Shown in pieces: positions 10,745-64,000 of a DNA stretch of 64,000 nucleotides. The stretch is taken from IMG/VR virus record IMGVR_UViG_3300021959_006017, positions 1-64,000 of that record, one strand, 5' to 3'. The translations under genes and the position numbers were made by a program. The notes beneath the pieces were generated by a model. That model searched no databases and was not told the origin of the DNA. It saw only the letters and a list, made by a program, of their open reading frames with translations. Position 1 is the first letter of the stretch. Each line of letters begins with the position of its first letter.

Positions 10745-10752
10745 TATAAATA
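10745..10752 (+). promoter_or_regulatory. Late promoter TATAAATA, 5 nt before ATG 10758
   Basis: Exact T4 late consensus directly after the terminator. Confidence 0.7.
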
Positions 10753-10757
10753 TTTGC

Positions 10758-11345
10758 ATGGAAGATCCAAGAGATGAATATCGTATATTACCAAATCTTT
10801 TACCTAAATCCTATGCAGATCTTTTAGAAGCTGAACTTTCTAAAATACATTGGTATTGGTATCCAAGTGCTTCAGGAGATGTTGCTGTAGATCCCGATGA
10901 CAAAAATATTTTTGATTCTCCCCAAATGCAACATGTTTTTATTGAAGAAAATGAACCAATATCTCCGTATGCTTCTCTAATACAACCAGTAGTTTGGTTT
11001 TTAGAAAAAGAAATGCAAATGAGTATTAAAAATATTGTACGTGTAAAAGCAAATCTTTTAATGCCAGGTAGATCAAACTTAGATAACTATAATATTCCTC
11101 ATGTTGATTCTCCAAGCGACGATTATATTAGCATGGTTTATTATGTAAACAATGCAGACGGTGATACTAAAATATTTCACAAAACACTTGACGAAGGACA
11201 CAAAGACTTATATACTATAGCAGGCATTAGTCCTAAGAAAGGAAGAGCTGTAATGTTTAAATCAAATAGATTTCATGCAAGCACACCCCCGTTTAAAGCT
11301 GATAAAAGAATAGTATTAAACTTTGTATTACAACCAGGAACATAA
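10758..11345 (+). CDS. 2OG-Fe(II) oxygenase
   Basis: PHVD (HxD), SMVYYVNNADGDT, FHAS..P...KRIVLNF (distal His and Arg). Confidence 0.8.
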   Translation: MEDPRDEYRILPNLLPKSYADLLEAELSKIHWYWYPSASGDVAVDPDDKNIFDSPQMQHVFIEENEPISPYASLIQPVVWFLEKEMQMSIKNIVRVKANLLMPGRSNLDNYNIPHVDSPSDDYISMVYYVNNADGDTKIFHKTLDEGHKDLYTIAGISPKKGRAVMFKSNRFHASTPPFKADKRIVLNFVLQPGT

Positions 11346-11347
11346 AA

Positions 11348-12391
11348 ATGACAGATAGAGCAAAAGCCTTTTTTATTAATGGAGGTGCAGGCAGGGTGCT
11401 TGCTAGTATTCCAGCATTAGAAAAGTATTATGAAGAAACTAGCCAAGACTTTATTATTGTAGCAGAAGGCGGAATGGACCTCTATAAAGGTCATCCAATA
11501 CTACATGAACGTGCATATGATGTTTGGCATAAAGGAATATTCCAAGACAAAATTAAAAATATGGATGTAGTAACTCCAGAACCATACAGAGTGTGGGAGT
11601 ACTACAATCAAAAATGTAACCTACAACAAGGTTTTGATATAGAAATAAACGGTAAAGGTATAAGAGATCTTCCAAGACCTTTTATACATTTAACACAAGA
11701 AGAAAAAGTAAATGGTAAAGCATGCATTAAAGAGGTATTAGATAATGTAGGTTTTAATAAAACTATCGTATTCCAACCATTTGGAAGAGGCATAGGAGAA
11801 CACGCAGGGTTTTTAACAGATCCAAGTGGAAGAAGTTTTGAATATGCAAATATAATAAGCATTGTGAAGAAGTTACAAGAAAAAGAGTTTGCAGTTATTT
11901 TAATGAGTGAACTAAACTTAGACTTCCAAAAAGAAGGAACGCCGAAACCTGTTGCACAGCCAAGTGGAATAGGTTTAAAGCAGTGGGCAGCTATTATTGC
12001 CGAAGCAGACTATTTCTTAGGCTGCGATAGTGTGGGACAACATATTGCACACAGTTTAAATAAACCTGCTACAGTAGTAACTGGTAGCACTTTTGCTGAA
12101 AATGTTAGTTTTTTAGATGATGAAAAGTTTGATATTCAAGACATGGGAGAAAGTAAAAGAAAATATGATCCTATTAGAATAGTACCAGACGAAGTTGTTG
12201 CAAAAAACAACGATGGTATAATGGCTATGAATGGTCCCATTGAAGACGAGATTATTAAAAACTTAATAAAAAACTTTGAAAAATATGTAAAAAAAGAAAC
12301 TACAGTAAAAAAGAAAGTTTCTGAACTTACTAACAAAACAAACAATACAGCACCTAAGCTGGTGCCTGGTTTATCACCTATTAAGGAATAA
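11348..12391 (+). CDS. GT-B glycosyltransferase, GT9 (heptosyltransferase)-like
   Basis: N-terminal GGAGRVLASIPAL and C-terminal WAAIIAEADYFLGCDSVGQHIAHSLNKPATVVTGST, matching the GT9 'L..AA.I..A..F.G.DSG..H.A.A...P...L.G.T' pattern. Confidence 0.65.
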   Translation: MTDRAKAFFINGGAGRVLASIPALEKYYEETSQDFIIVAEGGMDLYKGHPILHERAYDVWHKGIFQDKIKNMDVVTPEPYRVWEYYNQKCNLQQGFDIEINGKGIRDLPRPFIHLTQEEKVNGKACIKEVLDNVGFNKTIVFQPFGRGIGEHAGFLTDPSGRSFEYANIISIVKKLQEKEFAVILMSELNLDFQKEGTPKPVAQPSGIGLKQWAAIIAEADYFLGCDSVGQHIAHSLNKPATVVTGSTFAENVSFLDDEKFDIQDMGESKRKYDPIRIVPDEVVAKNNDGIMAMNGPIEDEIIKNLIKNFEKYVKKETTVKKKVSELTNKTNNTAPKLVPGLSPIKE

Positions 12392-12393
12392 AA

Positions 12394-23714: not shown

Positions 23715-24960
23715 TTATTTCTCCAATCAACTTTGTTGTAGAATAGCCGTCTACAGTAGGAACAATATGCACAGGCGCAATATCATGTCCTACAACTTGT
23801 TCTACCGTATAATCGCCACCTTTTACTATTAGGTCGGGTTGTATAGTTTTGATTAACTCATAAGGAGTATCGTCTGTAAATGTAACTACTTCGTCTACCC
23901 AAGGTAACATTTCAAGTTGTGCAACTCTTGTTTGCACATCATTTATAGGGCGATCGCTACCTTTTAATCTTTGTACACTAGCATCTGTATTAACACCAAC
24001 AACTAGTTTATTTCCTAAACTGCGAGCTTCTTTTAATAACTGTAAGTGTCCTTTGTGTAGTATATCAAAAACACCGTTTGTAAAAACCACACCTTTAGTA
24101 AGGTCTTCATGTGTTACAACATGTACACCTCTATATTCAACACTTCGTGCAGCAGCAAAACATGCTTTTGCAGCAGCGTCAAAAACATCTATATCTTGAT
24201 GAATATAATATGCAAGAACTGCAAGTACAGTATCACCTGCACCTGTTACATCTGCTACTTCTTTTACAGGTTCTTGATAGTGTTTGATTCTGCCATCTTC
24301 ATTCATTACAGTAAGCCCATTCTTGCCGTCTGTAACTACTAACCAAGTCCAGTTATACTTTTTCATTTTTAGCAGTGCAGTTTCTTTACGGAAATCGCCA
24401 AACCACTGTTTGTATTCTTTCATATTAGGTTTAACAAGAAACGCACCTTTATAGTATTCAGGATCTTGTTTAGGATCCACAAGTACTTTGCAGCCTCTTT
24501 TAACTAGTGTAGGCACAGTGTCTTTTTTTATAGTACCTTTGTTATAGTCACTTATACAAACAAGATCGTTTGTTACTTGATCATTAATAAGTCTATTAAA
24601 TGCTTCCGTGCCTGTATAATGTTCTTCACGATCCCAACGTACAATGTGTTGCCCGCCTTGTCCTACTAGTCTATTTTTAGTAGTTGTAACCTTGCTATCA
24701 AGTGTTGCTCTAAAATCTATTTTGTTATAAGGTTTAAAACAATCAATAACTCTATAACCTTCTCTGTCTGGCGCTATAGTTCCGTAGATAGCTATATTTC
24801 CATTAAGACTTGCAATATTAAGTGCAAGGTTAGCAGCACCGCCGGGACAAAACTTTTGTTCACTTTCTTTAAGCACAGGAACAGGTGCTTCAGGACTGAT
24901 TCTTTTGGCTTTGCCAATAATCCATCTGTCCAACATAATATCGCCATAAACTCTAATCAT
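23704..24960 (-). CDS. hldE: Bifunctional heptose-7-phosphate kinase / heptose-1-phosphate adenylyltransferase
   Basis: GDIMLD.W..G...RISPEAPVPV, GGAAN.A.N, SDYNKG, VDPK, DVTGAGDT (PfkB kinase) fused to FTNGVFDILHKGH, KG..RPIN, KGGDY, STT (nucleotidyltransferase). Confidence 0.93.
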   Translation of the reverse strand: MIRVYGDIMLDRWIIGKAKRISPEAPVPVLKESEQKFCPGGAANLALNIASLNGNIAIYGTIAPDREGYRVIDCFKPYNKIDFRATLDSKVTTTKNRLVGQGGQHIVRWDREEHYTGTEAFNRLINDQVTNDLVCISDYNKGTIKKDTVPTLVKRGCKVLVDPKQDPEYYKGAFLVKPNMKEYKQWFGDFRKETALLKMKKYNWTWLVVTDGKNGLTVMNEDGRIKHYQEPVKEVADVTGAGDTVLAVLAYYIHQDIDVFDAAAKACFAAARSVEYRGVHVVTHEDLTKGVVFTNGVFDILHKGHLQLLKEARSLGNKLVVGVNTDASVQRLKGSDRPINDVQTRVAQLEMLPWVDEVVTFTDDTPYELIKTIQPDLIVKGGDYTVEQVVGHDIAPVHIVPTVDGYSTTKLIGEINGS

Positions 24961-24965
24961 GCTTT

Positions 24966-24994
24966 ATTATACTATACCTTTATATTTTAGTCAA
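24966..24994 (-). promoter_or_regulatory. Sigma70-type promoter TTGACT-N17-TATAAT for the heptose operon
   Basis: Minus strand: -35 at 24994-24989, -10 at 24971-24966, 5 nt before the hldE ATG. Confidence 0.7.
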
Positions 24995-26842: not shown

Positions 26843-28002
26843 TAGTTATCTGCCCTTGGTTTAAGTGCTTTCGTAAGACTTTGTCTTTCTTCTACTTGTT
26901 CGCTACCTATGTCGGAAGTTTTAGTATTATTAATAAACTGTGTCTTATAAGTTTGACGCTCTAATGTATTACTTAGTTCCATACGTATGTCGTCTTGTAC
27001 TTTTACCCAGCGGGTTCCATCATATTTAAACATTCTGTTAGGTAAAAAATCTGTTCTTAAAAAATAATCACCTTCTTGTTTGTCTCTTGGAAACTGTATT
27101 CCAAAACCAAACGGTGCGCCGTTAGGTGTGTCGCTACCTGTTCCAACAAGATAACCTGTATAACCTTCTCTATCAGGTCTGTCTGTGACTTCGTCTGCAC
27201 CTATACTAATATTACTTGCATCTAAATCAGTTTCGTCTGCTGTTTTAAGTGCAACTGAGCCATCATCATTTGTAGCAACAGTATAATAGTGATCAATATC
27301 AAAACCGCTTTTTGGTGAATCTATTTCTGCTTGTGCAACAACAGCATTGTTTATTTGCATTTCTTTTTCGTATGTAGATAGCAAATCTCTTAGTGTAGTG
27401 TCTGAACCTTCTGCTGCTGGTAAGTCGAGTATTTCTGCATATTCTTGTCCGTCGTATATTTGTTTAAGTTTTAAACGATATAAGTGCGGATACCAAGTAT
27501 GTGAAAACCCCTCTGCTGCACGATTTACGTCTTCTATAACATAAAATCTTTTTAGTGCAATATCATAGTCGTTAAGTGCATATTCGTCTTTTAAATGAGG
27601 CAACTCGATAACATCACCTGCCATAGGCTTGCGTCCTATTGTTTTTACAATACTATTAATGTGTACTGTAAGAAAAAGTGTATCATTGCTTAAAAATAAA
27701 CCAAATGCACTAAGGTCAAAGTCTATATCTTGAACGTTGTATATACCACGTGTAGTATAAACATCCGGATCATACTTTCTATCTCTATTTTCTAAAAATA
27801 ACAAATCTTGAATATTTGTTTCTTTTACAACATCATACTCTGGCTGTGTAGAACTTCTATCTTCCTCTGAAGGAGCGTTTGGTCCTATATATTTGTGAAT
27901 ATTGATATCAGTACCGCCAATAGTAAACATTTCATAGACTTGTTTGTCTATAAAATGATAATCATTGCCGCGTTCTGGTTTATATAAAGATAGTCTTGGC
28001 AT
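26842..28002 (-). CDS. gp14: Neck/head-closure protein, T4 gp14-like
   Basis: Start MPRLSLY at 28002; DL..FGLF...D.LF.T.H, P.AGDVIELPH, Y.I.DV, Y.LKL pattern; position beside gp13/gp15. Confidence 0.6.
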   Translation of the reverse strand: MPRLSLYKPERGNDYHFIDKQVYEMFTIGGTDINIHKYIGPNAPSEEDRSSTQPEYDVVKETNIQDLLFLENRDRKYDPDVYTTRGIYNVQDIDFDLSAFGLFLSNDTLFLTVHINSIVKTIGRKPMAGDVIELPHLKDEYALNDYDIALKRFYVIEDVNRAAEGFSHTWYPHLYRLKLKQIYDGQEYAEILDLPAAEGSDTTLRDLLSTYEKEMQINNAVVAQAEIDSPKSGFDIDHYYTVATNDDGSVALKTADETDLDASNISIGADEVTDRPDREGYTGYLVGTGSDTPNGAPFGFGIQFPRDKQEGDYFLRTDFLPNRMFKYDGTRWVKVQDDIRMELSNTLERQTYKTQFINNTKTSDIGSEQVEERQSLTKALKPRADN

Positions 28003-28007
28003 ATACA

Positions 28008-28027
28008 TATTTATCGTTAGATAAATA
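28008..28027. promoter_or_regulatory. Back-to-back late promoter pair TATTTATC-gtta-GATAAATA
   Basis: Perfect 8-bp inverted repeat in the 44-nt gap between divergent neck genes. Confidence 0.7.
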
Positions 28028-29418: not shown

Positions 29419-29683
29419 CACAAATAGTTTTTAGATTTGTAGGACGGCAGTTGTTCAAATCTCCGTCAATATGAAATACATTAAACTGCTCAGGATGTTT
29501 GCTAGTGTGGCCGCATTTCTCGCATTCATCCTTTTTCTCGTAACCACGCTGTTTCCATTTAGGTATACCGTGTCCTACACCATTACGTAAACATTTTTCA
29601 CATAGACGTCTATAGTAGATCTTGCCATCTTTTTTATAGTTTATAGCAGCAGGCCTTTGCCCACATTTACATAAAGGTCTCAT
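29348..29683 (-). CDS. Zn-finger / HNH-like protein
   Basis: CKC...CEKC; CEKCG...HIDGDLNN....NLKTICANC. Confidence 0.7.
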   Translation of the reverse strand: MRPLCKCGQRPAAINYKKDGKIYYRRLCEKCLRNGVGHGIPKWKQRGYEKKDECEKCGHTSKHPEQFNVFHIDGDLNNCRPTNLKTICANCQRILQKTGVRWKQGDLRPDF

Positions 29684-29793
29684 ATACATATTTACCTCAC
29701 CTTTTCGGTCCCTTTTTCTATGCTATTATCCAGTATTTTTATCCTACAAGTGGTAAATACAGTAGCAGAACACTATCCTATAGGAGAAATAAA

Positions 29794-32700
29794 ATGGCAT
29801 TAGTATCACCCGGTGTAGAGGTTAACGTAATTGACGAAAGTTTTTACACCCCAGCAGCAGCAGGCACAGTTCCTGTAATATTTGTTGCTTCTGCCAGCAA
29901 TAAGACAAGTAGTTCAGGATCGGGTATTGCTCCTGGTACAACGAAAGCTAATGCTGGACGAGCATATTTAATCACTAGTCAAAGAGAGCTAGGAGAAACA
30001 TTTGGAGATCCGGTCTTCAAGTCTGATAACAATGGTAACATGATCCATGCAGGCGAGCAAAACGAATACGGACTTCAAGCAGCATACAGTTTATTAGGTG
30101 TAACAAACTCAGTATACGTTGTAAGAGCAGACTTAGATCTAGGAGAACTAGATCCTAGTGCAACTGCTCCAGAAGGCGAGCCAGCAGACGGCGCAAACTG
30201 GTTTGATACACAAATCACAAGTTTCGGCATTCTAGAATGGAATGCAGCACCGCTATCAACAACAGGCGGACAATCATTCACAGCACAGACAAGGATTGTT
30301 GTAACTGAAACATCAGACATTGATAGCATTACAGATGCTCCAAAGACTTCAATCGGTCAAATCGGAAATTACGCTGTAGATGCAACAACAACAATGAATC
30401 GTTTGTGGTACAAAACAGCTGGTACAAACACACTAGCAGGATCATCAGGTACATGGGTTGAAGTTGGTTCGGATGCATGGAAGGCAAGTCACTACACAGT
30501 ACGTGGCGCAAATACAAATCCAACTCTGCAAAATGGCGACACTATGTTAATCAACGAAACAACAGTACTATTAAGTGGTACAACTATTTCAGATATGGCT
30601 ACAGCTATTAACACTGCTGGCATTACAGGTGTTGCAGCAGCAGTTGTAGACAGTTCATTAGAAATATATGCAACAAGTGCAGCTATTAGTGACGAAGGTG
30701 GCGGCGGGACAACAGCCGACGGCAAACTAAAAATCGAAGGCGGTGTTGGAACATTAACTGGACCGTCAGACACTGCATCTGACGCTGGTGCATTAGGTAT
30801 TGTTGAAAAAACATACCAGTCACCGCAGCTAGCCATTCAATCACATACAAGTGTACCTGCATTTAAGTCAACTGACACAGATCCTGCACCAACAGGCAGC
30901 ATTTGGATTAAAACAACCAATCCAAATGGTGGAGCAGAGTTTAGTGTTAAACAATATAATGAAGATACTCAACTATGGAACTCCATAGATGCTCCTATGT
31001 ATACAACAGCTGAAGGTGCTATTTACGATCTTGATAAAACAGGCGGTACAGCACTAAGAGCTGGTGATTTGTTTGTAAAAGCAAACGTAGAAGAAGAAGA
31101 CCCATCCATTTCAAACTTTAAGATTTATGTTCGTAATGGAACAGGCGCTACTTCTGCAAAGAGTGCTAAGATTACTACTCAACTTACAGCAAGCACATAT
31201 ACATTTGATCTTGCAGAAACAGTTGCAAACGATAATGCACTAGGTACACCAAAAACTATTTCTGTAACAACAACAGCAGCAAGTGCAGACGCTGATGTTA
31301 TTGCAGGTGAGATCAACGCAGCAGGATTTACAAATATTGTATCTTATGTTGATAGCACAAATAAAGTAGTTATTGAACACAAACTAGGCGGTGAGATTCG
31401 TGTAGATGATACAGATGGATTGATCGCACTAGCAGGTTTTGCAGCATATAATTACACTACCGAAGAAGGAACAGCAAACTTTTATGATGCTCCAACAGGC
31501 GATGATGTGTATGACTATGTAATCAGCTTATGGAAAGAACTAAGCTACACAGCTAGTGAAGATGCTCCATCAAGTCTTACTGAAGATGGTAAGATCTGGT
31601 ATAGTTCTGTTGTAGACGAAGTTGACATGATGATTCATGATGGTAGCAACTGGGTTGGATACCAAAACTTTAGTTCAGATTATGCAGACTGTGATCCAGA
31701 AGGACCGATTGTAAGTGCAACTGAACCTACTGAACAGTCAGACGGAACAGCACTAGTAGATGGCGATGTTTGGATTGATACTTCAACTATTGAAGAATAT
31801 CCAGGTGTTTACATTTATAACGCTGTACTAGAAAGTTGGGTACAAAGAGATATCACAGATCAAACAACTGATAATGGTGTATTGTTTGCAGATGCACGTT
31901 GGAGTGATGCAGGTTCTAACTCAGCAGCAGGATATTGTAGATCTACTAACAAGTGACTACTTAGATCCAGATGCTCCAGATCCAGCACTATATCCAAAAG
32001 GTATGTTGCTATGGAACATGCGTAGAAGCGGATTTAATGTTAAAGAATTCCGTCGTAACTATATTGATACATCAGGTGACAACGGGCGTTATCAAGTTAT
32101 TGGTGCAAGTGGTTCTTTAGAAGATGAATCAATGAGCGGTTACTATGCAAACCGTTGGGTTACTGCTTCAGGTAACAACGAAGATGGATCAGGTACATTT
32201 GGACGTCATGCAGTACGCAAGACTGTTGTACAGGCTCTACAAGCAGAAGTTAACAGCAATGTTGATATTAGAGATGAAGAATCACGTCAGTTTAACTTGA
32301 TTGCTTGCCCAGGTTATTCAGAACTAATCGGCGAAATGATTAGTCTAAACTATGACAGACGTCTAACAGCGTTTGTTGTTGGTGATACACCAGCAAGACT
32401 AACACCAGATGCAACTTCACTAAATGAGTGGGCAACTAACGTTGCTGGCGCAGTTGAAGATAATGATGATGGTGCAGTTAGCCGTGATGAATACTTAGGT
32501 ATGTATTATCCATGGGGCTTCACAAGCGACAACTTAGGAAACAATGTTGTTGTTCCACCAAGTCATATGGCACTACGCACTATCATACTAAACGACCAAG
32601 TTGCTTATCCGTGGTTTGCACCAGCAGGTACAAGACGTGGCGGTGTTACAAACGCAACAAGTTCAGGATATGTTACAAGTGAAGGCGAGTTCCAAACTGT

Positions 32701-33180: not shown

Positions 33181-33216
33181 AAATATGCATAAATACTACT
33201 GTAATAGGAGATTATA

Positions 33217-33902: not shown

Positions 33903-33936
33903 AACGGGAGTTTCTTTTTGAGACTCCCGTTTTTTA
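33903..33936 (+). terminator. Rho-independent terminator
   Basis: AACGGGAGTTTC-ttttt-GAGACTCCCGTT followed by T-run. Confidence 0.8.
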
Positions 33937-33952
33937 TTAGATAAATATTATT

Positions 33953-38159: not shown

Positions 38160-38187
38160 AAATAGGCACTTCGGTGCCTATTTTTTT
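38160..38187 (+). terminator. Rho-independent terminator with C(UUCG)G tetraloop
   Basis: AAATAGGCAC-TTCG-GTGCCTATTT then T-run; UUCG loops are typical of T4-like phages. Confidence 0.88.
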
Positions 38188-38200
38188 GAGTAAATACTGT

Positions 38201-39781: not shown

Positions 39782-39791
39782 TAAATACAGT

Positions 39792-41673: not shown

Positions 41674-41754
41674 AATAACTGTGCTATAACACTTAAAGGC
41701 ACTAGTAGCAATGTAGCTACTGCACATAGGCATAACATTTAGGAGGCATATACT

Positions 41755-42756
41755 ATGGCATCATTAGCAGAAATCCGAGCAAAGCTCAAAGAACAAGAGA
41801 ACCGTCAATCAGGTGGTTCAAGCGGCCCAAGCGGTCCAAACCCAATTTACCCATTTTGGAATATGAAAGAAGGCGAGAGTGCAACTCTACGTTTCCTTCC
41901 TGATGGTAACGCAGACAACACTTTCTTTTGGAAAGAGCGTTTGGTTATTAAACTTCCATTTGCTGGTGTAAAAGGTGAAACAGATTCACGTCCAGTACAA
42001 GTACAGATTCCATGTATGGAAATGTATGGCGAGTCATGTAACATTCTTAATGAAGTACGTGGCTGGTTCAAAGACCCTGCATTAGAAGATATGGGTCGTA
42101 AGTATTGGAAAAAGCGTTCTTACATTTTCCAAGGCTTTGTAACAGATAATCCACTAGCAGACGATGAAGCACCTGAGAATCCAATCAGACGCTTTATTAT
42201 TGGTCCACAAATCTTCCAGATCATTAAGCAGGCGCTTATGGATCCAGACATGGAAGAATTGCCAACAGATTACACAGCAGGTGTAGACTTCCGTCTTAAC
42301 AAAACTTCAAAAGGCGGATATGCAGACTACTCAACATCAAATTGGGCACGTAGAGATCGTCCGCTTGGTGATGCAGAGATGGCAGCAGTCAACACACATG
42401 GGTTGTTTGATCTAAATGACTTCTTACCTAAAAAGCCAGACGAAACTGCACAAAAAGTAATGCAGGAAATGTTTGAAGCATCAGTAGACGGAGAAGCATA
42501 TGATGCAGATCGTTGGAGTAATTACTTCCGCCCTGCAGGTATGCAAGCACGTACAGGTGATCCAAACACAGCACCTAGCCCGCAAGCAACGGCTGTAAGT
42601 CAGAGCGCACCTGCTCCGACAGCGGCTCCTGCTCCGGTAGCAGAAACTGCTCCAGCACCAGAAGCAACTCCAGCACCAGCAGCTGAAGCGGCTCCTGCAG
42701 AAGGTGGCAACGCCCAAGACATTCTAGCAATGATTAGAAGCCGTCAAGGACAATAA
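41755..42756 (+). CDS. gp32: Single-stranded DNA-binding protein, T4 gp32-like
   Basis: FW......A.LRFLP, C.E..G..C.I, YW.K.SY, G..IF..I, G.DF.L.K..KGGYADY..S.W; AGGAGG RBS; next to uvsX. Confidence 0.85.
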   Translation: MASLAEIRAKLKEQENRQSGGSSGPSGPNPIYPFWNMKEGESATLRFLPDGNADNTFFWKERLVIKLPFAGVKGETDSRPVQVQIPCMEMYGESCNILNEVRGWFKDPALEDMGRKYWKKRSYIFQGFVTDNPLADDEAPENPIRRFIIGPQIFQIIKQALMDPDMEELPTDYTAGVDFRLNKTSKGGYADYSTSNWARRDRPLGDAEMAAVNTHGLFDLNDFLPKKPDETAQKVMQEMFEASVDGEAYDADRWSNYFRPAGMQARTGDPNTAPSPQATAVSQSAPAPTAAPAPVAETAPAPEATPAPAAEAAPAEGGNAQDILAMIRSRQGQ

Positions 42757-46165: not shown

Positions 46166-46721
46166 CATTTGAAAATCTTTCAGCTACTATATTTTTTGTT
46201 TCTTCATTATACATTTTTTTATAATCTTTTTCTCTAGATGTATCAGATTTAACAAATGTACGCAGTAGTTCATTATTGTAAGGTATAGGCATTTCTAAAA
46301 AAGACTCGTGTAAGTTTGTATAATCTATAAGATTATCTACTTTAATATTTCTTGCATGTGCATACATACCCCAGTCGTTTTGATCTTTTGCTCCTCTTAC
46401 AAATGCTTCAAAGCCCTTGGCAACTTTTTTAGGTTTACGTTTTTTATAATAAAAATAAGCACTAATAAGTTTATCCCAAGGATTTCTTTCTACTGCAAAC
46501 TTATAATAGGTTTCCCATTCTTTAGGATATGTATTGGCAATCCATTGCCAGCTTCTATGTCCATTTATTTCGTTTGTATTAATCCGAGGCGTACCGTCAG
46601 CTTTACTTCCTGTACAAATATCAGTTGGTCCGAGATAGTTTACAAGATATTTTTCAATACTGGATCCGGCTGTCTTTCTTGTCTTAACAAATATAAATTT
46701 ATGCTGGTGAGATATGATCAT
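46137..46721 (-). CDS. Sulfotransferase (carbohydrate sulfotransferase family 2-like)
   Basis: FIFVKTRKTAGSSI (5'-PSB) and KFAVERNPWDKLISAY (3'-PB) PAPS-binding motifs; start MIISHQHK at 46721. Confidence 0.8.
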   Translation of the reverse strand: MIISHQHKFIFVKTRKTAGSSIEKYLVNYLGPTDICTGSKADGTPRINTNEINGHRSWQWIANTYPKEWETYYKFAVERNPWDKLISAYFYYKKRKPKKVAKGFEAFVRGAKDQNDWGMYAHARNIKVDNLIDYTNLHESFLEMPIPYNNELLRTFVKSDTSREKDYKKMYNEETKNIVAERFSNVIKHFSYNF

Positions 46722-46747
46722 ATAAATATTTAACTGGAGCGAAGCAA

Positions 46748-47311: not shown

Positions 47312-47399
47312 TGGATTTAGAAACAACGTACAAAAAAACTGTGCTATTACCGTAACCATAAAAATATAATGCTAGTTAAGTACATACATAAATATCAGT

Positions 47400-48173
47400 A
47401 TGAAAGTAGTATTAGTCACAGGTGGATTTGATCCACTGCACTCAGGACATATTGAGTATTTCAAAGAAGCAAAGAAGTTAGGCGACAAACTAGTTGTTGG
47501 CGTGAATTCAGACGATTGGTTAACACGAAAAAAAGGCAGACCATTTATGACCTTTGAAGAACGTTGTGCTATTATAAAAGAACTAGAAGTAGTTGATCAG
47601 GTTATTGGATTTAACGATCTAGACAACACAGCAAACAAAGCAATCGGCCAAGTAGCAACTATGATTACAGGCGATGACATTATGATCTTTGCCAACGGCG
47701 GAGATCGAACTGATACAACAACTCCGGAATATGAAGTATACGGTAGCTATCGTTGGTGCGAGTTTGCATTTGGCGTAGGCGGCGAAAACAAAATGAACTC
47801 TAGTAGTTGGATACTAGATGAATGGAAAACACAAAAGACAGAACGTGACTGGGGATATTGGCGTGTACTAGATCATAAGCCTGAAAAAGGATATAAGGTA
47901 AAAGAACTTGTAATATATCCTGGAAAAAGTTTAAGCGATCAGAAACACTACAAAAGATCTGAACAATGGATTGTACTTGAAGGGGTAGTTAAGATGGACA
48001 CAGAATGGGACGGCAGATCCGACAGTATTCATTTACAACCTCATACATTACCATATGAAATAGGTAAAGAAGTTTGGCATAAAGCAAGCAACCCCAACGG
48101 TGAAAACGCACACATACTTGAAATACAATGGGGTGGTGTGTGTGTTGAAGAAGATATAGAAAGAAGGGATTAA
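47400..48173 (+). CDS. Cytidylyltransferase-like domain fused to mannose-6-phosphate-isomerase-type cupin
   Basis: TGGFDPLHSGH, GVNSD.WL.RKKG, FANGGDR, K.NSSSWIL; then R.WG.WRVL, KVKEL...PG.SLS.Q.H.KRSE.W, WH...N, EIQ.G...EEDI.R. Confidence 0.82.
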   Translation: MKVVLVTGGFDPLHSGHIEYFKEAKKLGDKLVVGVNSDDWLTRKKGRPFMTFEERCAIIKELEVVDQVIGFNDLDNTANKAIGQVATMITGDDIMIFANGGDRTDTTTPEYEVYGSYRWCEFAFGVGGENKMNSSSWILDEWKTQKTERDWGYWRVLDHKPEKGYKVKELVIYPGKSLSDQKHYKRSEQWIVLEGVVKMDTEWDGRSDSIHLQPHTLPYEIGKEVWHKASNPNGENAHILEIQWGGVCVEEDIERRD

Positions 48174-51417: not shown

Positions 51418-52258
51418 CTTACATACAAAGTTTGGTGCCCTCAATAGTGGCCCTGTTTTTGATGCCTTTCGTACTGGCGCTAATGCTCTCGGGCATAGTG
51501 TTGTTGTTGACGGTAATGACGGCATTGATGTTATTTGGAGCGTACTTTGGAACGGTCGCATGTCTGGAAACCGTGCTATTTGGGAAAGAAACATTTCACA
51601 ATCCAAACCGACCATCGTCCTCGAAGTCGGAGGAATATCTCGAGGATCCACTTGGAAGGTAGGATTAAATGGAATTAATAGAGATGCTTTTTTCGGTGAT
51701 GGCGGGAACGATAGTAGGCGTAGCGATCTACTTAATCTTAGATTGAAACCGTGGCGCACTGAAGGCAAATACATTCTTATATGTGGACAGCATGATAAGA
51801 GTTTACAATGGCAAGACATGCCTAGAATGAGTCAATGGGTAATGGATACTATTGATGAAATAAAAAAGCATACCGATCGTACAATAATATTTCGACCACA
51901 TCCTAGATGCACCCTACCTCATATCGAACACGAATATACTAATGTTAAAAGACAAAACCCTCGCTATATTAATGGCACTTATGACGATTTTGACATGGGC
52001 TTTGATAACATATGGGCTACTGTAAGTTATAGCTCAAACCCAGGTATACACAGTATACTCGAAGGCGTACCTGCTTTTGTAAGTCCGCACAGTCTTGCAT
52101 ACGATGCAGCAAATGATATAGACTTCCTTCACGATATAGAAAACCCAATAAGACCTGATAGACAGCAATGGCTAAACGACTATGCATGGACAGAGTTTAC
52201 TGTAGAAGAAATAGCCTCAGGATTACCACTTAAACACTTGACATCTAAGCTAGTTTAA
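51407..52258 (+). CDS. Capsule-synthesis (KpsC/KpsS-like) glycosyltransferase 4
   Basis: LKPWR...YILICGQHDKS, TDRTIIFRPHP, ATVSYSSNPGIHSILEGVPAF. Confidence 0.6.
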   Translation: MQFNLHTKFGALNSGPVFDAFRTGANALGHSVVVDGNDGIDVIWSVLWNGRMSGNRAIWERNISQSKPTIVLEVGGISRGSTWKVGLNGINRDAFFGDGGNDSRRSDLLNLRLKPWRTEGKYILICGQHDKSLQWQDMPRMSQWVMDTIDEIKKHTDRTIIFRPHPRCTLPHIEHEYTNVKRQNPRYINGTYDDFDMGFDNIWATVSYSSNPGIHSILEGVPAFVSPHSLAYDAANDIDFLHDIENPIRPDRQQWLNDYAWTEFTVEEIASGLPLKHLTSKLV

Positions 52259-52266
52259 GTTATAAT
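52238..52266 (+). promoter_or_regulatory. Sigma70 consensus promoter TTGACA-N17-TATAAT
   Basis: Perfect consensus, 6 nt before ATG 52273. Confidence 0.8.
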
Positions 52267-52272
52267 GTTTAC

Positions 52273-53460
52273 ATGATACAGACAATAGAAGACGCACTCG
52301 AAACCCTTGCCGGTCTTAAAGGCAACTACAATCTAAAGATAGAAAAGGAAGAGTTTACTATAGTGAATAGTATAGCTCGTCAAGTCTTTAGAGGTACAGC
52401 TTTAACTGATAGGCAGTATGCACTAATGAAGGACAAACTGCAAAAATATATTCCGCAGTTTGAACAAGCAGGTTTGGAAAACACACTAGTTGCTCTAGAG
52501 GAACTTAGACAGCCGCTAAGATCTATTGACAGAACTAGATATATTAAGATAGTTGATTATCCAGACGACATGCCGTATGATGCAGATGAATCTGAAAAGT
52601 ATATTGCTGTTAGGTTTCCATTTAAAAAGTCTGACATTATGCTTATAAATGATATCCCTAAACGAGATGGTTATCATCATAATAAAGGAAGTCATACACA
52701 TTATTTTGCATTAACTGAAAACTATTTGTTGGCTATTGGTGATAAGTTTTTTAATAAAGATTTTGAAATAAACAAAGTTCTTAAAGAAAGATATCAACAA
52801 ATAAAACAAATACAAAATAATGCAGAACAATATCTTCCATTTTTAGTAGATGATAAGATACAAAATATTAGCCCTAAACTTGAAAAGATAATACAAGAAG
52901 AAACGGGCTACGATCTATTAAAAATATATGATAGAAGATTTAGGTATTGTTTAGACGATATTAATATTAATGTTACTGGAAGTTCACTAGAAGAAGATAT
53001 TGCTAGTAGAAAAACTATTGAGTATCAAAGCAAACCTAGTGTACAATCTATTGATAATATTTTATATGCCTTGTATAACTTAGACAGATTTCCTATGCTA
53101 GTTGTACTAGATCACAAAGATTGTGAAACACAACTGCACGAAGTTGTAAACTTTTTTAGAGACTTGGTATCCTCTGAAGAACAAAGTGTGCTGTTTAGAG
53201 ATGAAGATACCGATAGCGGGTTTAACCAGTTGATAAAACACAGAAAACTTAATAATTGGGTTGACAAAACTACAAAAATAGTGTATATTAGTGATAATAA
53301 ACTTCCTAAAGTTTTATTAGAAACAGATTGGAGCCCAAACTGTGCATTTGCATACAACAGTAATAACAACAAAAGTGTACAGTTATATATTAAAAATAGT
53401 TGCGATTTAGTTGTGTTTAGAGAAGAGACAATAAGTCCGTTTGTGAGAATGTACAGATAA
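52273..53460 (+). CDS. Hypothetical protein upstream of uvsW
   Basis: 395-aa ORF; SIARQV..G.ALTDRQ N-terminal motif; no function recognised. Confidence 0.6.
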   Translation: MIQTIEDALETLAGLKGNYNLKIEKEEFTIVNSIARQVFRGTALTDRQYALMKDKLQKYIPQFEQAGLENTLVALEELRQPLRSIDRTRYIKIVDYPDDMPYDADESEKYIAVRFPFKKSDIMLINDIPKRDGYHHNKGSHTHYFALTENYLLAIGDKFFNKDFEINKVLKERYQQIKQIQNNAEQYLPFLVDDKIQNISPKLEKIIQEETGYDLLKIYDRRFRYCLDDININVTGSSLEEDIASRKTIEYQSKPSVQSIDNILYALYNLDRFPMLVVLDHKDCETQLHEVVNFFRDLVSSEEQSVLFRDEDTDSGFNQLIKHRKLNNWVDKTTKIVYISDNKLPKVLLETDWSPNCAFAYNSNNNKSVQLYIKNSCDLVVFREETISPFVRMYR

Positions 53461-62125: not shown

Positions 62126-62146
62126 AGTTTCCCGATAAATAATATT

Positions 62147-62914
62147 ATGCAATTAATACCTAGATATTTAGTCACAAATAGAATCAACATTGTCGCAGAT
62201 GTGGCAGGATTCATTACGGAGTATAGACCAGTGTACAATAAACAAATACAACTTTATAAAGGCGTTGACAATGTTATAGAGTTTAAAGTTCTCAACGCAG
62301 ATCAAAAAGCAGTAGACATAAGTTCATACACACCGACTGTGTATGCATTTGGAGAAGATAAAACACTGCTTATAGAAAAACAAGGAGTAGTATCCGCAAC
62401 TAAAGGAGTGTTTACTGTAACTATTACAGAAAGCGACTTGCTTAATATTAAACAACAGTATCTAGGTTATAATGTATTGCTAAACACAGACTCCGGAAAA
62501 ACATTAACATACGCTCACAGTAACTTTGATAATGATGCTACAATGTTTATTAATGCTAGAACAATGCCTGGTCCATTAGCAACATACGAAGTTACACAGT
62601 TTGCCGAAACAGCAGTAAACAGTGATGTATGGGTTAGCGAAAGTATAACAGCACAGCCTGCTATCAATGGCAACGAAGCACTACATACAGCAGCCGTATA
62701 TACAGACGGTTATGCTGGAGATGTTACTGTACAAGCAACACTTGACAATCAAGTAACAGGTAACACTGTATGGGCAAACGTAAGCACACTAACATTTACA
62801 GGGTCAGAAACACAACCTACACCTGTTAACTTTAATGGTGTATACAGTTATTTAAGATTCAAAACAGACGCAGATCCTGCTAGTACTATAACAAAGGTTT
62901 TGGTCAGAAATTAG
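62147..62914 (+). CDS. Probable virion structural protein
   Basis: Late motif GATAAATA at 62134; LYKGVDN.IEF.V.N.DQK; beta-rich. Confidence 0.5.
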   Translation: MQLIPRYLVTNRINIVADVAGFITEYRPVYNKQIQLYKGVDNVIEFKVLNADQKAVDISSYTPTVYAFGEDKTLLIEKQGVVSATKGVFTVTITESDLLNIKQQYLGYNVLLNTDSGKTLTYAHSNFDNDATMFINARTMPGPLATYEVTQFAETAVNSDVWVSESITAQPAINGNEALHTAAVYTDGYAGDVTVQATLDNQVTGNTVWANVSTLTFTGSETQPTPVNFNGVYSYLRFKTDADPASTITKVLVRN

Positions 62915-62915
62915 G

Positions 62916-62943
62916 TTGACATATATTAAAAATAATATATAAT
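62916..62943 (+). promoter_or_regulatory. Sigma70 promoter TTGACA-N16-TATAAT
   Basis: Consensus boxes 6 nt before ATG 62950. Confidence 0.72.
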
Positions 62944-62949
62944 ATAGTA

Positions 62950-63312
62950 ATGTATAAAATAATAATAACATTAGTGGCAACATTGTTTGCCACTTTTTCT
63001 TATGCTAACGAAGAAACTAAAAAGTCATTTACAGATGATATGACATTTAGTGTTACATTAGAAAGAGGCATGGAAACAGAACTACAATATGGTTACTTCT
63101 ATGCTACTAAGCCAATAACTAACAAACTCAGCACAACATACGGTGCAACATGGGATATAGACGCTGTAGGTAAATCTTTAGTAGATTTATCAAGTCAAAC
63201 TATAAATGTTAGTTATCAAGTAAACGATAATCTAAGTGTATATGCACTTACTGATTTAAATGATAATTTTGAGAGATCGGAAACATGGGTAGGTACAACT
63301 TACATTTGGTAG
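62950..63312 (+). CDS. Secreted protein, possible small outer-membrane beta-barrel
   Basis: Signal peptide MYKIIITLVATLFATFSYA; alternating beta strands; C-terminal TWVGTTYIW with terminal aromatic residue. Confidence 0.55.
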   Translation: MYKIIITLVATLFATFSYANEETKKSFTDDMTFSVTLERGMETELQYGYFYATKPITNKLSTTYGATWDIDAVGKSLVDLSSQTINVSYQVNDNLSVYALTDLNDNFERSETWVGTTYIW

Positions 63313-63770
63313 GATGGATAGCTGGACTAACTCTGCTACTAGGACTTAGCAGAGTTATTCCTCACCCACCTAACTTTACACCAATACTAGCAGTTGGAAT
63401 ATTTGTTCCTTTGCTAACAGGTAAATGGCAACATGCACTTCCACTAACACTAGGTGCTATGTTTATAGGAGATTTGTTTTGGGGATTACATCCTTATATG
63501 GCATGGACCTATGCAAGCGTAGCTTTAGTATCATTAGTAGCATTAAATATGAGTTTGTTGGTTAACTGCATTGTTGCTCCTATTATCTTTTTTATAATAA
63601 CAAACTTTGGTGTATGGACTAGCGGTTACTATGGATTAACCCTAGAAGGATTAATAGCATGTTATATTGCTGCTATTCCTTTCTTCCATATGACACTATT
63701 AGGAACTATTGTATATACAGGTCTGTTTTACGGATTATACAAAACTTATAGCCAAAAAGTCTTGACATAA
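63285..63770 (+). CDS. DUF6580-like inner-membrane putative transporter (start may be TTG 63306)
   Basis: SR.IPHPPNFTP..A, MFIGD.F.G.H, FFIITNFGVW...Y.....GL..CY..AIPFF...L.GT..Y. Confidence 0.7.
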   Translation: MGRYNLHLVGWIAGLTLLLGLSRVIPHPPNFTPILAVGIFVPLLTGKWQHALPLTLGAMFIGDLFWGLHPYMAWTYASVALVSLVALNMSLLVNCIVAPIIFFIITNFGVWTSGYYGLTLEGLIACYIAAIPFFHMTLLGTIVYTGLFYGLYKTYSQKVLT

Positions 63771-63790
63771 TCTAACACTGGTACTATAAT
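63762..63790 (+). promoter_or_regulatory. Sigma70 consensus promoter TTGACA-N17-TATAAT
   Basis: Perfect consensus, 6 nt before ATG 63797. Confidence 0.8.
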
Positions 63791-63796
63791 AATAGT

Positions 63797-64000
63797 ATGA
63801 GTGTAGTAAACGATACAGTTCTGACATACCTTCCTGCAAAGCGTAAGCAATCGCCGAGCGGATGGATCTCCTTCAATGCGCCGTGCTGTCATCATAACGG
63901 ACACTCTGTGGATACTCGCGGTAGAGGCGGTTTGATATCTAATGCCGATGGTAGTGTTAGCTATCACTGCTTCAACTGCGGTTTCAAAGCAAGCTGGCAA
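63797..64000 (+). CDS. DNA primase N-terminal zinc-binding domain (gp61-like), 3'-truncated; absent from the ORF track
   Basis: MSVVNDTVLTYLPAKRKQSPSGWISFNAPCCHHNG...RGRGG....SYHCFNCGFKASW. Confidence 0.75.
   Translation, partial: MSVVNDTVLTYLPAKRKQSPSGWISFNAPCCHHNGHSVDTRGRGGLISNADGSVSYHCFNCGFKASWQ

What the first reader, a model, noticed from the sequence alone, without database searches (positions are those of the whole stretch)
10745..63799. Pervasive leaderless gene starts behind both late (TAAATA) and sigma70 promoters
Seen: TAAATA followed after only 4-5 nt by ATG, with no room for a Shine-Dalgarno, at 10758, 33953, 38201 (terminase), 39792, 47400, 62147 (+) and 28002, 29683, 46721 (-); TTGAC(A/T)-N16/17-TATAAT followed after 5-6 nt by ATG at 52273, 62950, 63797 (primase) and 24960 (-, hldE). 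Sheath, tube, ssb and uvsX keep strong AGGAG leaders. Established: transcription starts about 5-7 nt after these boxes. Inference: at least 13 genes start at or next to the AUG, giving two-tier translational control (leadered for abundant proteins, leaderless for low-copy ones) and pointing to a host proficient in leaderless initiation. It also corrects several ORF-track starts.
Basis: partly seen in the sequence, partly recalled or inferred. Interest (0 to 1): 0.62.

Follow-up and report, generated by a model that had tools for sequence, protein, structure and literature searches.

The report
Promoter-fused leaderless genes in jumbo phage
In an uncultured T4-type jumbo phage and its many environmental relatives, about one gene in ten (including terminase, primase and helicase) starts 4-6 bases after a promoter box with no room for a ribosome-binding site, a layout kept for so long in evolution that these genes are almost certainly expressed as leaderless mRNAs, although no RNA data could be obtained to prove it.

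Summary
All 13 sites are as described. Genome-wide (236.7-kb IMG/VR contig), TAAATA is followed by an ORF-opening ATG 22 times at 4-5 nt, against about 1.7 per other distance (0.23 in simulations). TATAAT peaks one base later, at 5-6 nt. This is the offset expected if the A of ATG is +1 for a T4-type late box (-13..-6) and for a sigma70 -10 box (-12..-7). A complete 357.6-kb relative repeats the peak. PA5oct and T4 show none, so AT-richness is not the cause.

The layout is gene-specific and conserved across environmental relatives: terminase 79/80, the next gene 75/79, primase 79/80 (down to 56% identity); neighbouring leadered genes score 0. Codon periodicity starts at the ATG. The -1 base is a pyrimidine in 47/50 sites. 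Two natural variants replace the layout with a Shine-Dalgarno leader.

Best reading: leaderless (or 1-3 nt leader) mRNAs from host-sigma70 and phage gp55-type promoters.

'Pervasive' is overstated: about 10% of genes, 8/72 strong sigma70 sites, roughly a third of late boxes. The two-tier expression idea fits but is untested. The host is unknown.

It is a new variant of a known kind.

The parts
10747..10760 (+). Late-type box TAAATA (10747-10752) + 5 nt + ATG 10758. Gene: 195-aa 2OG-Fe(II) oxygenase-like protein. A terminator hairpin with T-run lies at 10693-10723, just upstream.
24958..24994 (-). Sigma70-type promoter: TTGACT (24994-24989), N17, TATAAT (24971-24966), + 5 nt + ATG 24960. Gene: 418-aa HldE-like bifunctional heptose kinase/adenylyltransferase.
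   Evidence: 80 bacterial homologues align from residue 2
28000..28013 (-). Late box (28013-28008) + 5 nt + ATG 28002. Gene: 386-aa virion structural protein. Replaces the longest-ORF GTG start at 28155.
   Evidence: Orthologues L042, L047, L074 and G002 keep the layout. L054 has the same box plus a ~20-nt AGGAG leader.
29681..29694 (-). Late box (29694-29689) + 5 nt + ATG 29683. Gene: 111 aa, unknown function. The ATG at 29689 lies inside the box.
   Evidence: conserved in G002 at 84% identity
33903..33955 (+). Terminator hairpin with T-run (33903-33935), late box (33942-33947), + 5 nt, ATG 33953. Gene: 417-aa tail-tube-like protein, homologue of PA5oct gp286.
38160..38203 (+). Terminator hairpin with T-run (38160-38187), late box (38191-38196), + 4 nt, ATG 38201. 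Gene: large terminase, 526 aa. Replaces the GTG start at 37997.
   Evidence: 79/80 loci keep TAA(A/G)TA-N4-5-ATG. The terminator stems show compensatory changes.
39782..39794 (+). Late box (39782-39787), abutting the terL stop codon, + 4 nt + ATG 39792. Gene: 602-aa virion structural protein, homologue of PA5oct gp278. Replaces the TTG 39732 / ATG 39741 starts.
   Evidence: 75/79 loci keep the layout; spacing is 4 or 5 in 60/64 distinct contexts.
46719..46732 (-). Late box (46732-46727) + 5 nt + ATG 46721. Gene: 194-aa sulfotransferase-like protein. The box overlaps by 2 nt the opposite-strand late box 46723-46728, which serves the SD-leadered gene at 46748.
   Evidence: Orthologues at 39-54% identity carry the box 5-8 nt before the ATG.
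47389..47402 (+). Late box (47389-47394) + 5 nt + ATG 47400. Gene: 257-aa cytidylyltransferase-like plus mannose-6-P isomerase C-terminal protein.
   Evidence: 25/27 loci
52238..52275 (+). Perfect sigma70 promoter TTGACA-N17-TATAAT (52238-52266) + 6 nt + ATG 52273. Gene: 395 aa, unknown function. The promoter lies in the 3' end of the upstream gene (gap 14 nt).
   Evidence: The G002 orthologue has TTGACA-N17-TATAGT + 7 nt + ATG.
62136..62149 (+). Late box (62136-62141) + 5 nt + ATG 62147. Gene: 255-aa BppU_N-like virion protein, homologue of PA5oct gp262, which itself has TATAAATA + 5 nt + ATG.
   Evidence: G002 has d=8
62916..62952 (+). Perfect sigma70 promoter TTGACA-N16-TATAAT (62916-62943) + 6 nt + ATG 62950. 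Gene: 120 aa, unknown function.
63762..63799 (+). Perfect sigma70 promoter TTGACA-N17-TATAAT (63762-63790) + 6 nt + ATG 63797. Gene: DNA primase, 333 aa, running off the window.
   Evidence: 79/80 loci keep the layout down to 56% identity; L163 instead has a GAGGA leader.
29754..29796 (+). Contrast: the same late box (29754-29759) 34 nt before the sheath ATG 29794, with an AGGAG leader.
33190..33219 (+). Contrast: late box (33190-33195) 21 nt before the tail-tube ATG 33217, with an AGGAG leader.
41731..41757 (+). Contrast: TAGGAGG leader before the gp32-like gene (ATG 41755). The UvsX gene (ATG 42832) likewise has TAGGAG.

Best explanation
A defined subset of genes in this phage is built so that the promoter's -10 element ends 4-6 nt before the ATG. 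There are about 30 such genes in the 236.7-kb contig and 13 in the window. Transcription therefore starts at, or within 1-3 nt of, the A of the start codon, and the mRNA has no Shine-Dalgarno leader.

Two promoter classes are used. Host-sigma70 promoters (TTGAC(A/T)-N16-18-TATAAT, then 5-6 nt) drive early or replication genes: primase, DnaB-like helicase, an endonuclease, a DNA-polymerase-related ORF and the HldE-like gene. T4-type late promoters ((G/A)(A/G)TAAATA, then 4-5 nt, no -35) are presumably read by the clade's gp55-family sigma. They drive terminase, several virion proteins and some sugar-modifying enzymes.

Translation would start on the 5'-terminal AUG, as on known leaderless mRNAs. 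Most other genes, including the abundant sheath, tube, gp32-like, UvsX and (in a relative) major capsid genes, keep AGGAG leaders.

Shown: the sequence geometry, its statistics, its conservation, and the ATGs as real starts.

Inferred: the transcription start position, leaderless translation, and the role of the gp55-family sigma.
For: 1. Spacing peak. 22 ORF-opening ATGs lie 4-5 nt after TAAATA, against 1.69 per other distance and 0.23 in simulations. The sigma70 class peaks at 5-6 nt.
2. The 1-nt offset between the classes is what promoter geometry predicts. The T4 cryo-EM structure places the flipped adenines of TATAAATA at -12, -9 and -8. The box is therefore -13..-6, with 5 nt to +1. A sigma70 -10 hexamer is -12..-7, with 6 nt to +1 (established knowledge).
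3. The -1 base is a pyrimidine in 47/50 late sites, against 54/129 SD-led starts (P = 2e-11). This fits the -1Y/+1R rule for transcription starts.
4. The box is a promoter, not a ribosome-binding site. The same box precedes SD-leadered late genes at 13-34 nt. 5 of 30 sites follow a terminator hairpin directly and 8 head divergent units. The sigma70 sites keep the -35 box, the 17-bp spacer length and the -10 box while the spacer sequence drifts.
5. Gene-specific conservation: terL 79/80, gene 39792 75/79, gene 47400 25/27, primase 79/80; 0 in every leadered neighbour except one isolated late-type match in a single locus. 17 of 19 evaluable G000/G002 orthologue pairs keep the strict layout at 37-85% identity; the other 2 are at d=7 and d=8. 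When N-terminal codons are gained or lost, the ATG still sits at the same distance from the box.
6. The ATGs are real starts. Profiles and homologues align from residues 1-5. Codon-position entropy is periodic from the ATG onwards. Other pipelines call the 526-aa terminase. Natural variants L163 and L054 put an SD leader before the same ATG.
7. The late machinery exists in the clade. A gp55-family sigma (phrog_12791, E about 1e-80) is found in G002, G003, G004 and PA5oct. In G002 it sits behind a perfect sigma70 promoter. ATAAATA has been predicted as the late promoter of Rak2-like phages.
Against: - No transcription start, RNA or protein N-terminus was observed.
- The gp55 gene is not in this contig. 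This is explained by the missing ~97-kb segment, but for this genome it remains an inference.
- No gp45 clamp family was detected, even in the complete relative.
- About half of the sites lie inside tight same-strand gene arrays without an upstream terminator. There, read-through polycistronic RNA must also carry these ATGs, and coupling could contribute to their translation.
- Strict ATG use (50/54) does not differ from SD-led genes (117/129; P = 0.78).
- At d=4 the A of the ATG is one base closer to the box than the T4 numbering predicts.
Confidence: 0.78

Rival explanations
1. The boxes are promoters and leaderless RNAs may form, but the layout is selected mainly for genome compaction or operon architecture, with internal promoters embedded in the 3' end of the upstream gene. 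The proteins would then be made chiefly from read-through polycistronic RNA, by termination-reinitiation or coupling. Leaderless translation would be a minor route, not a control tier.
For: 17 of 30 sites lie in same-strand arrays, 12 of them with gaps from -4 (a 4-nt overlap) to 35 nt and no detected terminator. At 39792 the terL stop codon is 10 nt before the ATG.
Against: - Compaction alone does not need a fixed 4-6 nt distance or a -1 pyrimidine.
- 13 sites follow a terminator or head a divergent unit, where no read-through RNA is expected.
- Where the terL stop moves upstream in relatives, the box stays next to the ATG.
- Perfect-consensus sigma70 promoters are enriched among the fused sites (6/15 against 2/57, P = 7e-4).
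Confidence: 0.12
2. TAAATA (and TATAAT) next to the ATG is a non-Shine-Dalgarno translation signal. It could be an A/U-rich ribosome or S1 binding site on leadered mRNAs, like the A-rich motifs of Bacteroidota.
For: It is A/U-rich and lies at an RBS-like distance. Non-SD motifs close to starts exist in some bacteria (GeneMarkS-2 group B).
Against: - The two motifs each sit at their own promoter-specific distance.
- The sigma70 class needs a conserved -35 box 17 bp upstream, which is a transcription property.
- The same late box functions 13-34 nt upstream of SD-led genes.
- Some sites follow a terminator directly.
- The spacing is too rigid: almost nothing at 3, 6 or 7 nt.
- The phage otherwise uses canonical AGGAG.
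Confidence: 0.05
3. The promoter-adjacent ATG is not the translation start. The real start lies downstream, so the mRNA has an ordinary leader that happens to be open in frame.
For: Weak 4-mer SD-like words occur before some downstream in-frame starts.
Against: - Codon periodicity starts at the ATG.
- Homologues and profiles align from residues 1-5.
- SD-led variants use the same ATG.
- Most sites have an in-frame stop a few codons upstream and no other start nearby.
Confidence: 0.03
4. Chance co-occurrence in AT-rich DNA, or an artefact of ORF calling.
For: The genome is 38-39% GC, and TAAATA occurs 219 times.
Against: - Simulations give 0.23 against 22 observed.
- The more AT-rich PA5oct, and T4, show no peak.
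- The pattern replicates in G002 and is conserved gene by gene across 80-locus sets.
Confidence: 0.01

Closest known systems
Thermus thermophilus phage phiYS40 (middle/late transcripts mostly leaderless)
   Same: A large lytic phage in which a whole temporal class of genes is expressed without 5' leaders, from promoters placed next to the start codon. It is the clearest precedent for phage-wide use of leaderless mRNAs (summarised in PMC3594737; the primary paper, Sevostyanova et al. 2007, was not held).
   Different: - Its host belongs to Deinococcus-Thermus, where leaderless genes are the norm. Here the cultured relatives infect Proteobacteria, where the trait is rare.
- phiYS40 is not T4-like and has no gp55-type late box.
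- Here only about 10% of genes are involved, from both early (sigma70) and late promoters, alongside strong SD use.
- phiYS40 infection shifts IF2 and IF3 levels. Nothing comparable is known here, and no IF3-like gene was found.
Bacterial leaderless genes with a -10 box next to the ORF (Actinobacteria, Deinococcus-Thermus; GeneMarkS-2 'group C')
   Same: A -10 element 6-8 nt before the start codon, no SD, and a sharp spacing peak. The same kind of sequence statistics is used to infer leaderless transcription.
   Different: Those are cellular genomes using the housekeeping sigma. Here a virus uses the geometry with two different sigma types, one of them phage-encoded and independent of a -35 box. 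The trait is inherited gene by gene within a phage clade.
Phage T4 late promoters (TATAAATA; gp55/gp33/gp45)
   Same: An A/T-rich -10-like box without a -35 element upstream of late and structural genes. A gp55-family sigma is encoded by the clade. The box-to-+1 distance of 5 nt matches the d=5 peak.
   Different: - T4 late transcripts are leadered, and T4 shows no excess of TAAATA-N4-5-ATG.
- The core here is (G/A)(A/G)TAAATA rather than TATAAATA; only 13 full TATAAATA occur.
- TAAGTA variants occur in relatives.
- gp33 and gp45 homologues were not identified.
Phage lambda cI mRNA from PRM
   Same: The textbook phage leaderless mRNA, translated from a 5'-terminal AUG in a proteobacterial host (own knowledge; cited in the reference lists seen).
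   Different: That is a single regulatory gene of a temperate phage. It is not a conserved class of about 30 genes that includes terminase and replication enzymes.
Pseudomonas phage PA5oct (nearest cultured relative; Arenbergviridae) and Rak2-like jumbo phages
   Same: Shared gene order (sheath, tube, terminase, UvsX, primase, helicase). The same GATAAATAC late box and TTGACA/TATAAT early promoters. gp55-family sigma and bS21 genes. Two orthologous sites look fused there too: gp262, and the primase promoter.
   Different: PA5oct shows no genome-wide spacing peak. Its terminase is not box-adjacent. Its paper reports promoters but no leaderless transcripts. The expansion of the layout is specific to the environmental clade of G000 and G002.

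Membership tests
Leaderless mRNA genes | Transcription start at, or within a few nt of, the start codon | not testable with these tools
All contigs found are metagenome assemblies. The start is inferred only from promoter geometry.
Leaderless mRNA genes | No Shine-Dalgarno sequence, and no room for one, upstream of the start codon | tested here: met
   The -10 box ends 4-6 nt before the ATG. No SD word was found at any of the 13 window sites. Genome-wide, 1 of 27 sites (204424) has a weak TAAGG that overlaps the box.
Leaderless mRNA genes | A promoter -10 element at a fixed short distance from the start codon, seen as a sharp spacing peak | tested here: met
   Peaks at 4-5 nt (late box) and 5-6 nt (sigma70), P = 1.5e-11. 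Replicated in G002; absent in PA5oct and T4.
Leaderless mRNA genes | The box-adjacent codon is the true translation start (a 5'-terminal AUG) | tested here: met
   Homologues and profiles align from residues 1-5. Codon periodicity starts at the ATG. SD-led natural variants use the same ATG. ATG is used in 50/54 sites, but this does not differ from SD-led genes.
T4-type (gp55-dependent) late promoter | TATAAATA-like -10 element with no conserved -35 element | tested here: met
   TAAATA is invariant by construction. It is preceded by G/A and A/G, and the upstream positions are not conserved. The full T4 octamer TATAAATA is rare (13 copies), so this is a variant consensus.
T4-type (gp55-dependent) late promoter | The phage encodes a gp55-family sigma factor | tested here: inconclusive
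   Not found in this 67%-complete contig. Found in the relatives G002, G003 and G004 and in PA5oct (E about 1e-80). It lies in the ~97-kb segment that G000 lacks.
T4-type (gp55-dependent) late promoter | Located upstream of late or virion genes | tested here: met
   Boxes precede the sheath, tube, terminase, tube-like and virion structural genes.
T4-type (gp55-dependent) late promoter | Co-activators gp33 and the sliding clamp gp45 | tested here: inconclusive
   PF09116 (gp45 C-terminal domain) was not detected in G000 or in the complete G002. gp33 was not searched. Divergence may hide both.
Sigma70-type promoter | TTGACA and TATAAT hexamers 16-18 bp apart | tested here: met
   12/12 matches at 52238-52266, 62916-62943 and 63762-63790; 11/12 at 24966-24994. 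Both hexamers and the spacer length are conserved in 79/80 primase loci.
Sigma70-type promoter | Recognition by the host RNA polymerase holoenzyme | not testable with these tools
   The host is unknown and there is no biochemical data.

The most novel reading that the evidence does not exclude
In an abundant, uncultured clade of T4-type jumbo phages, fusing a promoter directly to the AUG may be a conserved regulatory device that could be called 'promoter-gated translation'. The ATG has no ribosome-binding site. Only transcripts that start at the gene's own promoter would be translated efficiently, through their 5'-terminal AUG. Read-through RNA from upstream units would stay largely silent for that gene. 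This would tie the timing and dose of terminase, primase, helicase and selected virion proteins to one promoter each. It would use both the host sigma70 and a phage gp55-type sigma. It would also be the first case of T4-type late promoters producing leaderless mRNAs, probably in a host lineage where leaderless genes are rare.
Probability: 0.3. Interest if true: 0.75.

Novelty: new variant of a known kind. Interest (0 to 1): 0.55.

Why it matters
Leaderless mRNAs are well known in Actinobacteria, Deinococcus-Thermus, archaea and a few phage genes. In T4-type phages, gene expression is thought of as promoter, then leader with Shine-Dalgarno, then gene.

Here a conserved, gene-specific leaderless class is inferred for core genes (terminase, primase, helicase). 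It is driven by two different sigma types. The clade has more than 600 hits for each of two core genes (terminase, primase) in IMG/VR.

If confirmed, three things follow:
1. It gives a natural system for asking why a virus keeps two translation-initiation modes side by side: dose control, temporal gating, or independence from anti-SD pairing.
2. It shows that gp55-type late promoters can deliver 5'-terminal AUGs.
3. It has a practical consequence. Standard gene callers pick wrong starts for these genes (for example 619 against 602 aa, or 594 against 526 aa). Box-to-ATG geometry could therefore be used to correct starts and predict promoters in thousands of uncultured phage contigs.

Tried and rejected
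- The look-up of encoding contigs gave only metagenome assemblies, which are useless for 5' ends. It did show how other pipelines call the starts.
- gp55 in G000: T4 gp55 by tblastn gave only a weak, spurious hit in a phrog_4205 gene. phrog_234 and phrog_12791 found nothing in G000. This is resolved as contig truncation.
- Host inference through the HldE-like gene failed. The best bacterial homologues are 33-41% identical and scattered over many phyla.
- A link between phage bS21 and the leaderless trait was rejected. PA5oct has bS21 but not the trait.
- No IF3-like gene was found. No gp45 family hit was found.
- PF07068 (major capsid) is absent from G000 because of the truncation. It was found in G002 and PA5oct.
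- ATG exclusivity as a test of the leaderless model was dropped as non-discriminating.
- The PA5oct promoter table (its Table S3) is not held. The primary phiYS40 paper is not held.
- Calling the gene at 39792 'portal' was rejected. It matches only virion structural families and PA5oct gp278.
- A simple regex parse of the primase -10 register is ambiguous in 12 of 66 contexts. The 79/80 figure comes from reading the alignment.

Full report
WHAT THE WINDOW IS. The window is the first 64 kb of a single 236,751-bp contig (38-39% GC). It is an IMG/VR virus record that CheckV rates 67% complete. Its large terminase is 54% identical to that of Pseudomonas jumbo phage PA5oct, 51% to Agrobacterium phage Atu_ph07 and 44% to Rak2-like phages. 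Gene order matches PA5oct: sheath, tube, tube-like, terminase, virion proteins, gp32-like, UvsX, then primase and DnaB-like helicase. IMG/VR returns more than 600 hits for each of the two core genes searched, terminase (84-93% identity among the 80 best) and primase (56-89%). One relative, G002, is a complete 357,559-bp genome. A synteny map shows that G000 lacks the segment equal to G002 99.5-196 kb. That segment holds the major capsid gene and the gp55-family late sigma gene.

CHECK OF THE OBSERVATION. The proposed test, a genome-wide histogram of box-to-ATG distance, gives a sharp peak. TAAATA is followed by an ATG opening an ORF of at least 60 codons 8 times at 4 nt and 14 times at 5 nt. 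The mean at other distances up to 30 nt is 1.69, and the eight flanking distances hold only 3 hits together (Poisson P = 1.5e-11). Two hundred first-order Markov simulations gave a mean of 0.23 and a maximum of 2. TATAAT, and full TTGAC(A/T)-N16-18-TAnnAT promoters, peak one base further out, at 6 nt (6 sites) and 5 nt (2 sites). The tool's own promoter scan finds only three perfect 12/12 sigma70 matches in 44-64 kb, and they are the three leaderless sites. The complete relative G002 repeats the result (9 + 19 late sites, P = 2e-15; sigma70 peak at 6 nt). Two negative controls show that AT-richness is not the cause. PA5oct is more AT-rich (33% GC) and uses the same late box, yet has no peak (0 + 3; P = 0.87). 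T4 has 10 matches against 12 for the reversed pattern.

WHY THE BOXES ARE PROMOTERS.
- The same (G/C)ATAAATA(C) box lies 13-34 nt upstream of other late genes, in most cases with a GGAG-type Shine-Dalgarno in between. Examples are the genes at 1622, 6826, 14212 and 14650, the sheath (29794), the tube (33217), and 46748. PA5oct shows the same before its sheath, tube and gp275 genes. An ATAAATA motif has already been predicted as the late promoter of Rak2-like phages.
- Five of 30 fused sites follow a terminator hairpin and T-run directly, and eight head divergent units. In the terminase alignment the terminator stems change by compensatory substitutions, while the box and its distance to the ATG stay fixed.
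- The sigma70-type sites keep the -35 hexamer, a 16-18 bp spacer (mostly 17) and the -10 hexamer while the spacer sequence drifts freely.
- The clade encodes a gp55-family sigma (phrog_12791, E about 1e-80; also matched by the T4 gp55 family phrog_234). In G002 this gene sits behind a perfect TTGACA-N17-TATAAT promoter. This fits a cascade from host sigma70 to gp55 to late genes.

WHY THE GEOMETRY POINTS TO LEADERLESS mRNA. In the T4 gp55 open-complex structure the flipped adenines of TATAAATA are at -12, -9 and -8. The box is therefore -13..-6, and five bases separate it from +1. For a sigma70 -10 hexamer (-12..-7) six bases do (established knowledge). The observed peaks, at 5 (and 4) and at 6 (and 5), therefore place the A of the ATG at +1 for each class separately. 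The base before the ATG is a pyrimidine in 47 of 50 late sites from G000 and G002, against 54 of 129 SD-led starts (P = 2e-11). This is the usual -1Y/+1R preference of transcription starts. No transcription start was observed directly.

WHY THE ATGs ARE THE REAL STARTS. Most sites have an in-frame stop a few codons upstream and no alternative start. PHROG profiles and 80 bacterial HldE homologues align from residues 1-5. Environmental orthologues align from residue 1 or 2. Across 60-61 distinct relatives, entropy by codon position becomes periodic right after the ATG: 0.92/0.45/1.26 for primase and 0.40/0.37/1.04 for terminase. JGI and ENA pipelines call the 526-aa terminase, but they split on the next gene, 602 against 619 aa. 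Two natural variants are informative. L163 lacks the sigma70 promoter and has GAGGA before the same primase ATG. L054 keeps the late box of the 28002 orthologue but carries a ~20-nt leader with AGGAG.

CONSERVATION. In the 80 terminase loci the box-ATG layout is present at terminase in 79/80, at the next gene in 75/79 and at the gene at 47400 in 25/27. It is present at 33953 in 4/5 and at 28002 in 3/5. Every leadered neighbour, each sampled in 1-66 loci, scores 0 apart from a single isolated late-type match. Spacing is 4 or 5 nt in 65/66 distinct terminase contexts and 60/64 contexts of the next gene. A TAAGTA variant of the box occurs in 12. The primase layout holds in 79/80 loci down to 56% protein identity. 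Genome-wide, 17 of 19 evaluable G000/G002 orthologue pairs keep the strict layout and two keep a near one (7 and 8 nt), at 37-85% identity. Two sites are even shared with PA5oct: gp262 (homologue of the gene at 62147, 26% identity) and the primase promoter.

HOW COMMON IT IS. The phage uses Shine-Dalgarno leaders for most genes: 233 of 322 crude gene calls have at least a 4-mer SD, and 26-32 are leaderless-type. Eight of 72 strong sigma70 sites (at least 11/12 matches) are fused to an ATG. These include 6 of the 15 perfect ones (P = 7e-4 against the 11/12 sites). About 24 TAAATA boxes are fused, against at most 54 with SD leaders. 'Pervasive' is therefore too strong; this is a conserved minority class.

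WHICH GENES.
- Sigma70-fused: primase, DnaB-like helicase, an endonuclease, a DNA-polymerase-related ORF, the HldE-like gene and some unknowns.
- Late-fused: terminase; virion proteins (28002, 33953, 39792, 62147, and a fibre-like protein at 153684); a 2OG-Fe(II) oxygenase; a nucleotidyltransferase; a sulfotransferase-like protein; and small unknowns.
- Leadered with strong SD: sheath, tube, gp32-like, UvsX, and the major capsid gene in G002.

HOST AND TRANSLATION FACTORS. The host is unknown. The HldE-like gene is only 33-41% identical to homologues from many phyla. Leaderless-rich genomes are common in Actinobacteria and Deinococcus-Thermus and rare in Proteobacteria. The cultured relatives infect Proteobacteria, and PA5oct lacks the trait. 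The claim about a leaderless-proficient host therefore cannot be judged. The clade encodes ribosomal protein bS21, but so does PA5oct. No IF3-like gene was found.

COMPARISON WITH WHAT IS KNOWN. The nearest precedent is Thermus phage phiYS40, whose middle and late mRNAs are mostly leaderless. Next come the '-10 box adjacent to the ORF' mode of Deinococcus-Thermus and the GeneMarkS-2 group C genomes. Transcriptome maps of the jumbo phages phiKZ and AR9 found no leaderless transcripts, and the PA5oct paper does not mention any. I found no report of T4-type late promoters fused to start codons. The library is incomplete, so this is absence of evidence only.

VERDICT. The leaderless reading is the best explanation (about 0.78), pending 5'-end data. 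The main alternative accepts the promoters but doubts that leaderless translation is the principal route to protein. I rate it a new variant of a known kind, of moderate interest.

Noticed in passing
window 29794-33145: The tail-sheath homologue is split into two overlapping ORFs in different frames (29794-31956 and 31874-33145). In the complete relative G002 it is one 1155-aa ORF (63020-66484). This is either a frameshift or assembly error in this contig, or a real split gene.
   Followed up: partly
G000 121228-121476 (L299); also G001-G003 and PA5oct 170985-171143: The phage encodes a ribosomal protein bS21 homologue (PF01165, E = 5.5e-18). It has a TTG start behind a TAGGAGG leader and a sigma70-like promoter. 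Because PA5oct has it too, it does not track the leaderless-rich trait.
   Followed up: yes
G000 contig ends; G002 99.5-196 kb: The contig lacks a ~97-kb segment that is present in G002. That segment holds the major capsid gene (G002 109353-110540, TAAGGAG leader), the gp55-family sigma gene (125397-126245) and very large ORFs of up to 5136 aa.
   Followed up: yes
G000 71.6-83.7 kb, minus strand: A regular array of about 20 strong promoters (TTGACA-N16/17-TATA(C/G)T). Most of them (18 of 20) lie 27-42 nt before a small SD-led ORF. This looks like an early-gene block, and it contrasts with the fused promoters elsewhere.
   Followed up: partly
window 46723-46732: Two late boxes on opposite strands overlap by 2 nt within TATAAATATTTA. 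One is fused to the minus-strand ATG 46721. The other serves the SD-leadered plus-strand gene at 46748. Together they form a compact bidirectional late promoter.
   Followed up: partly
L163 (primase locus) and L054 (orthologue of window 28002): Natural switches between the two layouts. L163 has a GAGGA leader and no sigma70 boxes before the primase ATG. L054 keeps the late box but has a ~20-nt AGGAG leader.
   Followed up: yes
G000 genome-wide sigma70-like sites: Fused promoters are biased towards a perfect consensus: 6 of 15 perfect 12/12 sites against 2 of 57 sites with 11/12 (Fisher P = 7e-4). This may be strong transcription compensating for weak leaderless translation.
   Followed up: partly
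window 7162-9796: Three tandem paralogues of one family of unknown function (phrog_4205), at 7162-8046, 8048-8953 and 8963-9796. They follow small tail-fibre-like ORFs.
   Followed up: no
G000 74151-74401 (-) and 148599-150119 (+): Eleven tRNA genes in two clusters: Arg-tct, Leu-taa, Met-cat; and Ser-gct, Gly-tcc, Thr-tgt, Leu-tag, Trp-cca, Pro-tgg, Ser-tga, Cys-gca.
   Followed up: no
window 35577-36014: Pipeline annotation gives this 145-aa ORF a Tn7 TnsA-like N-terminal (PF08722) hit. Its PA5oct homologue gp284 (43% identity) is annotated 'head closure'.
   Followed up: no
PA5oct (NC_071039) 145884-145892: The annotated primase start (GTG) directly abuts the TATAAT box of a TTGACA-N17-TATAAT promoter. 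An in-frame GTG lies 6 nt after the box. The annotated start is therefore probably wrong, and the gene may be a leaderless GUG-start transcript.
   Followed up: partly
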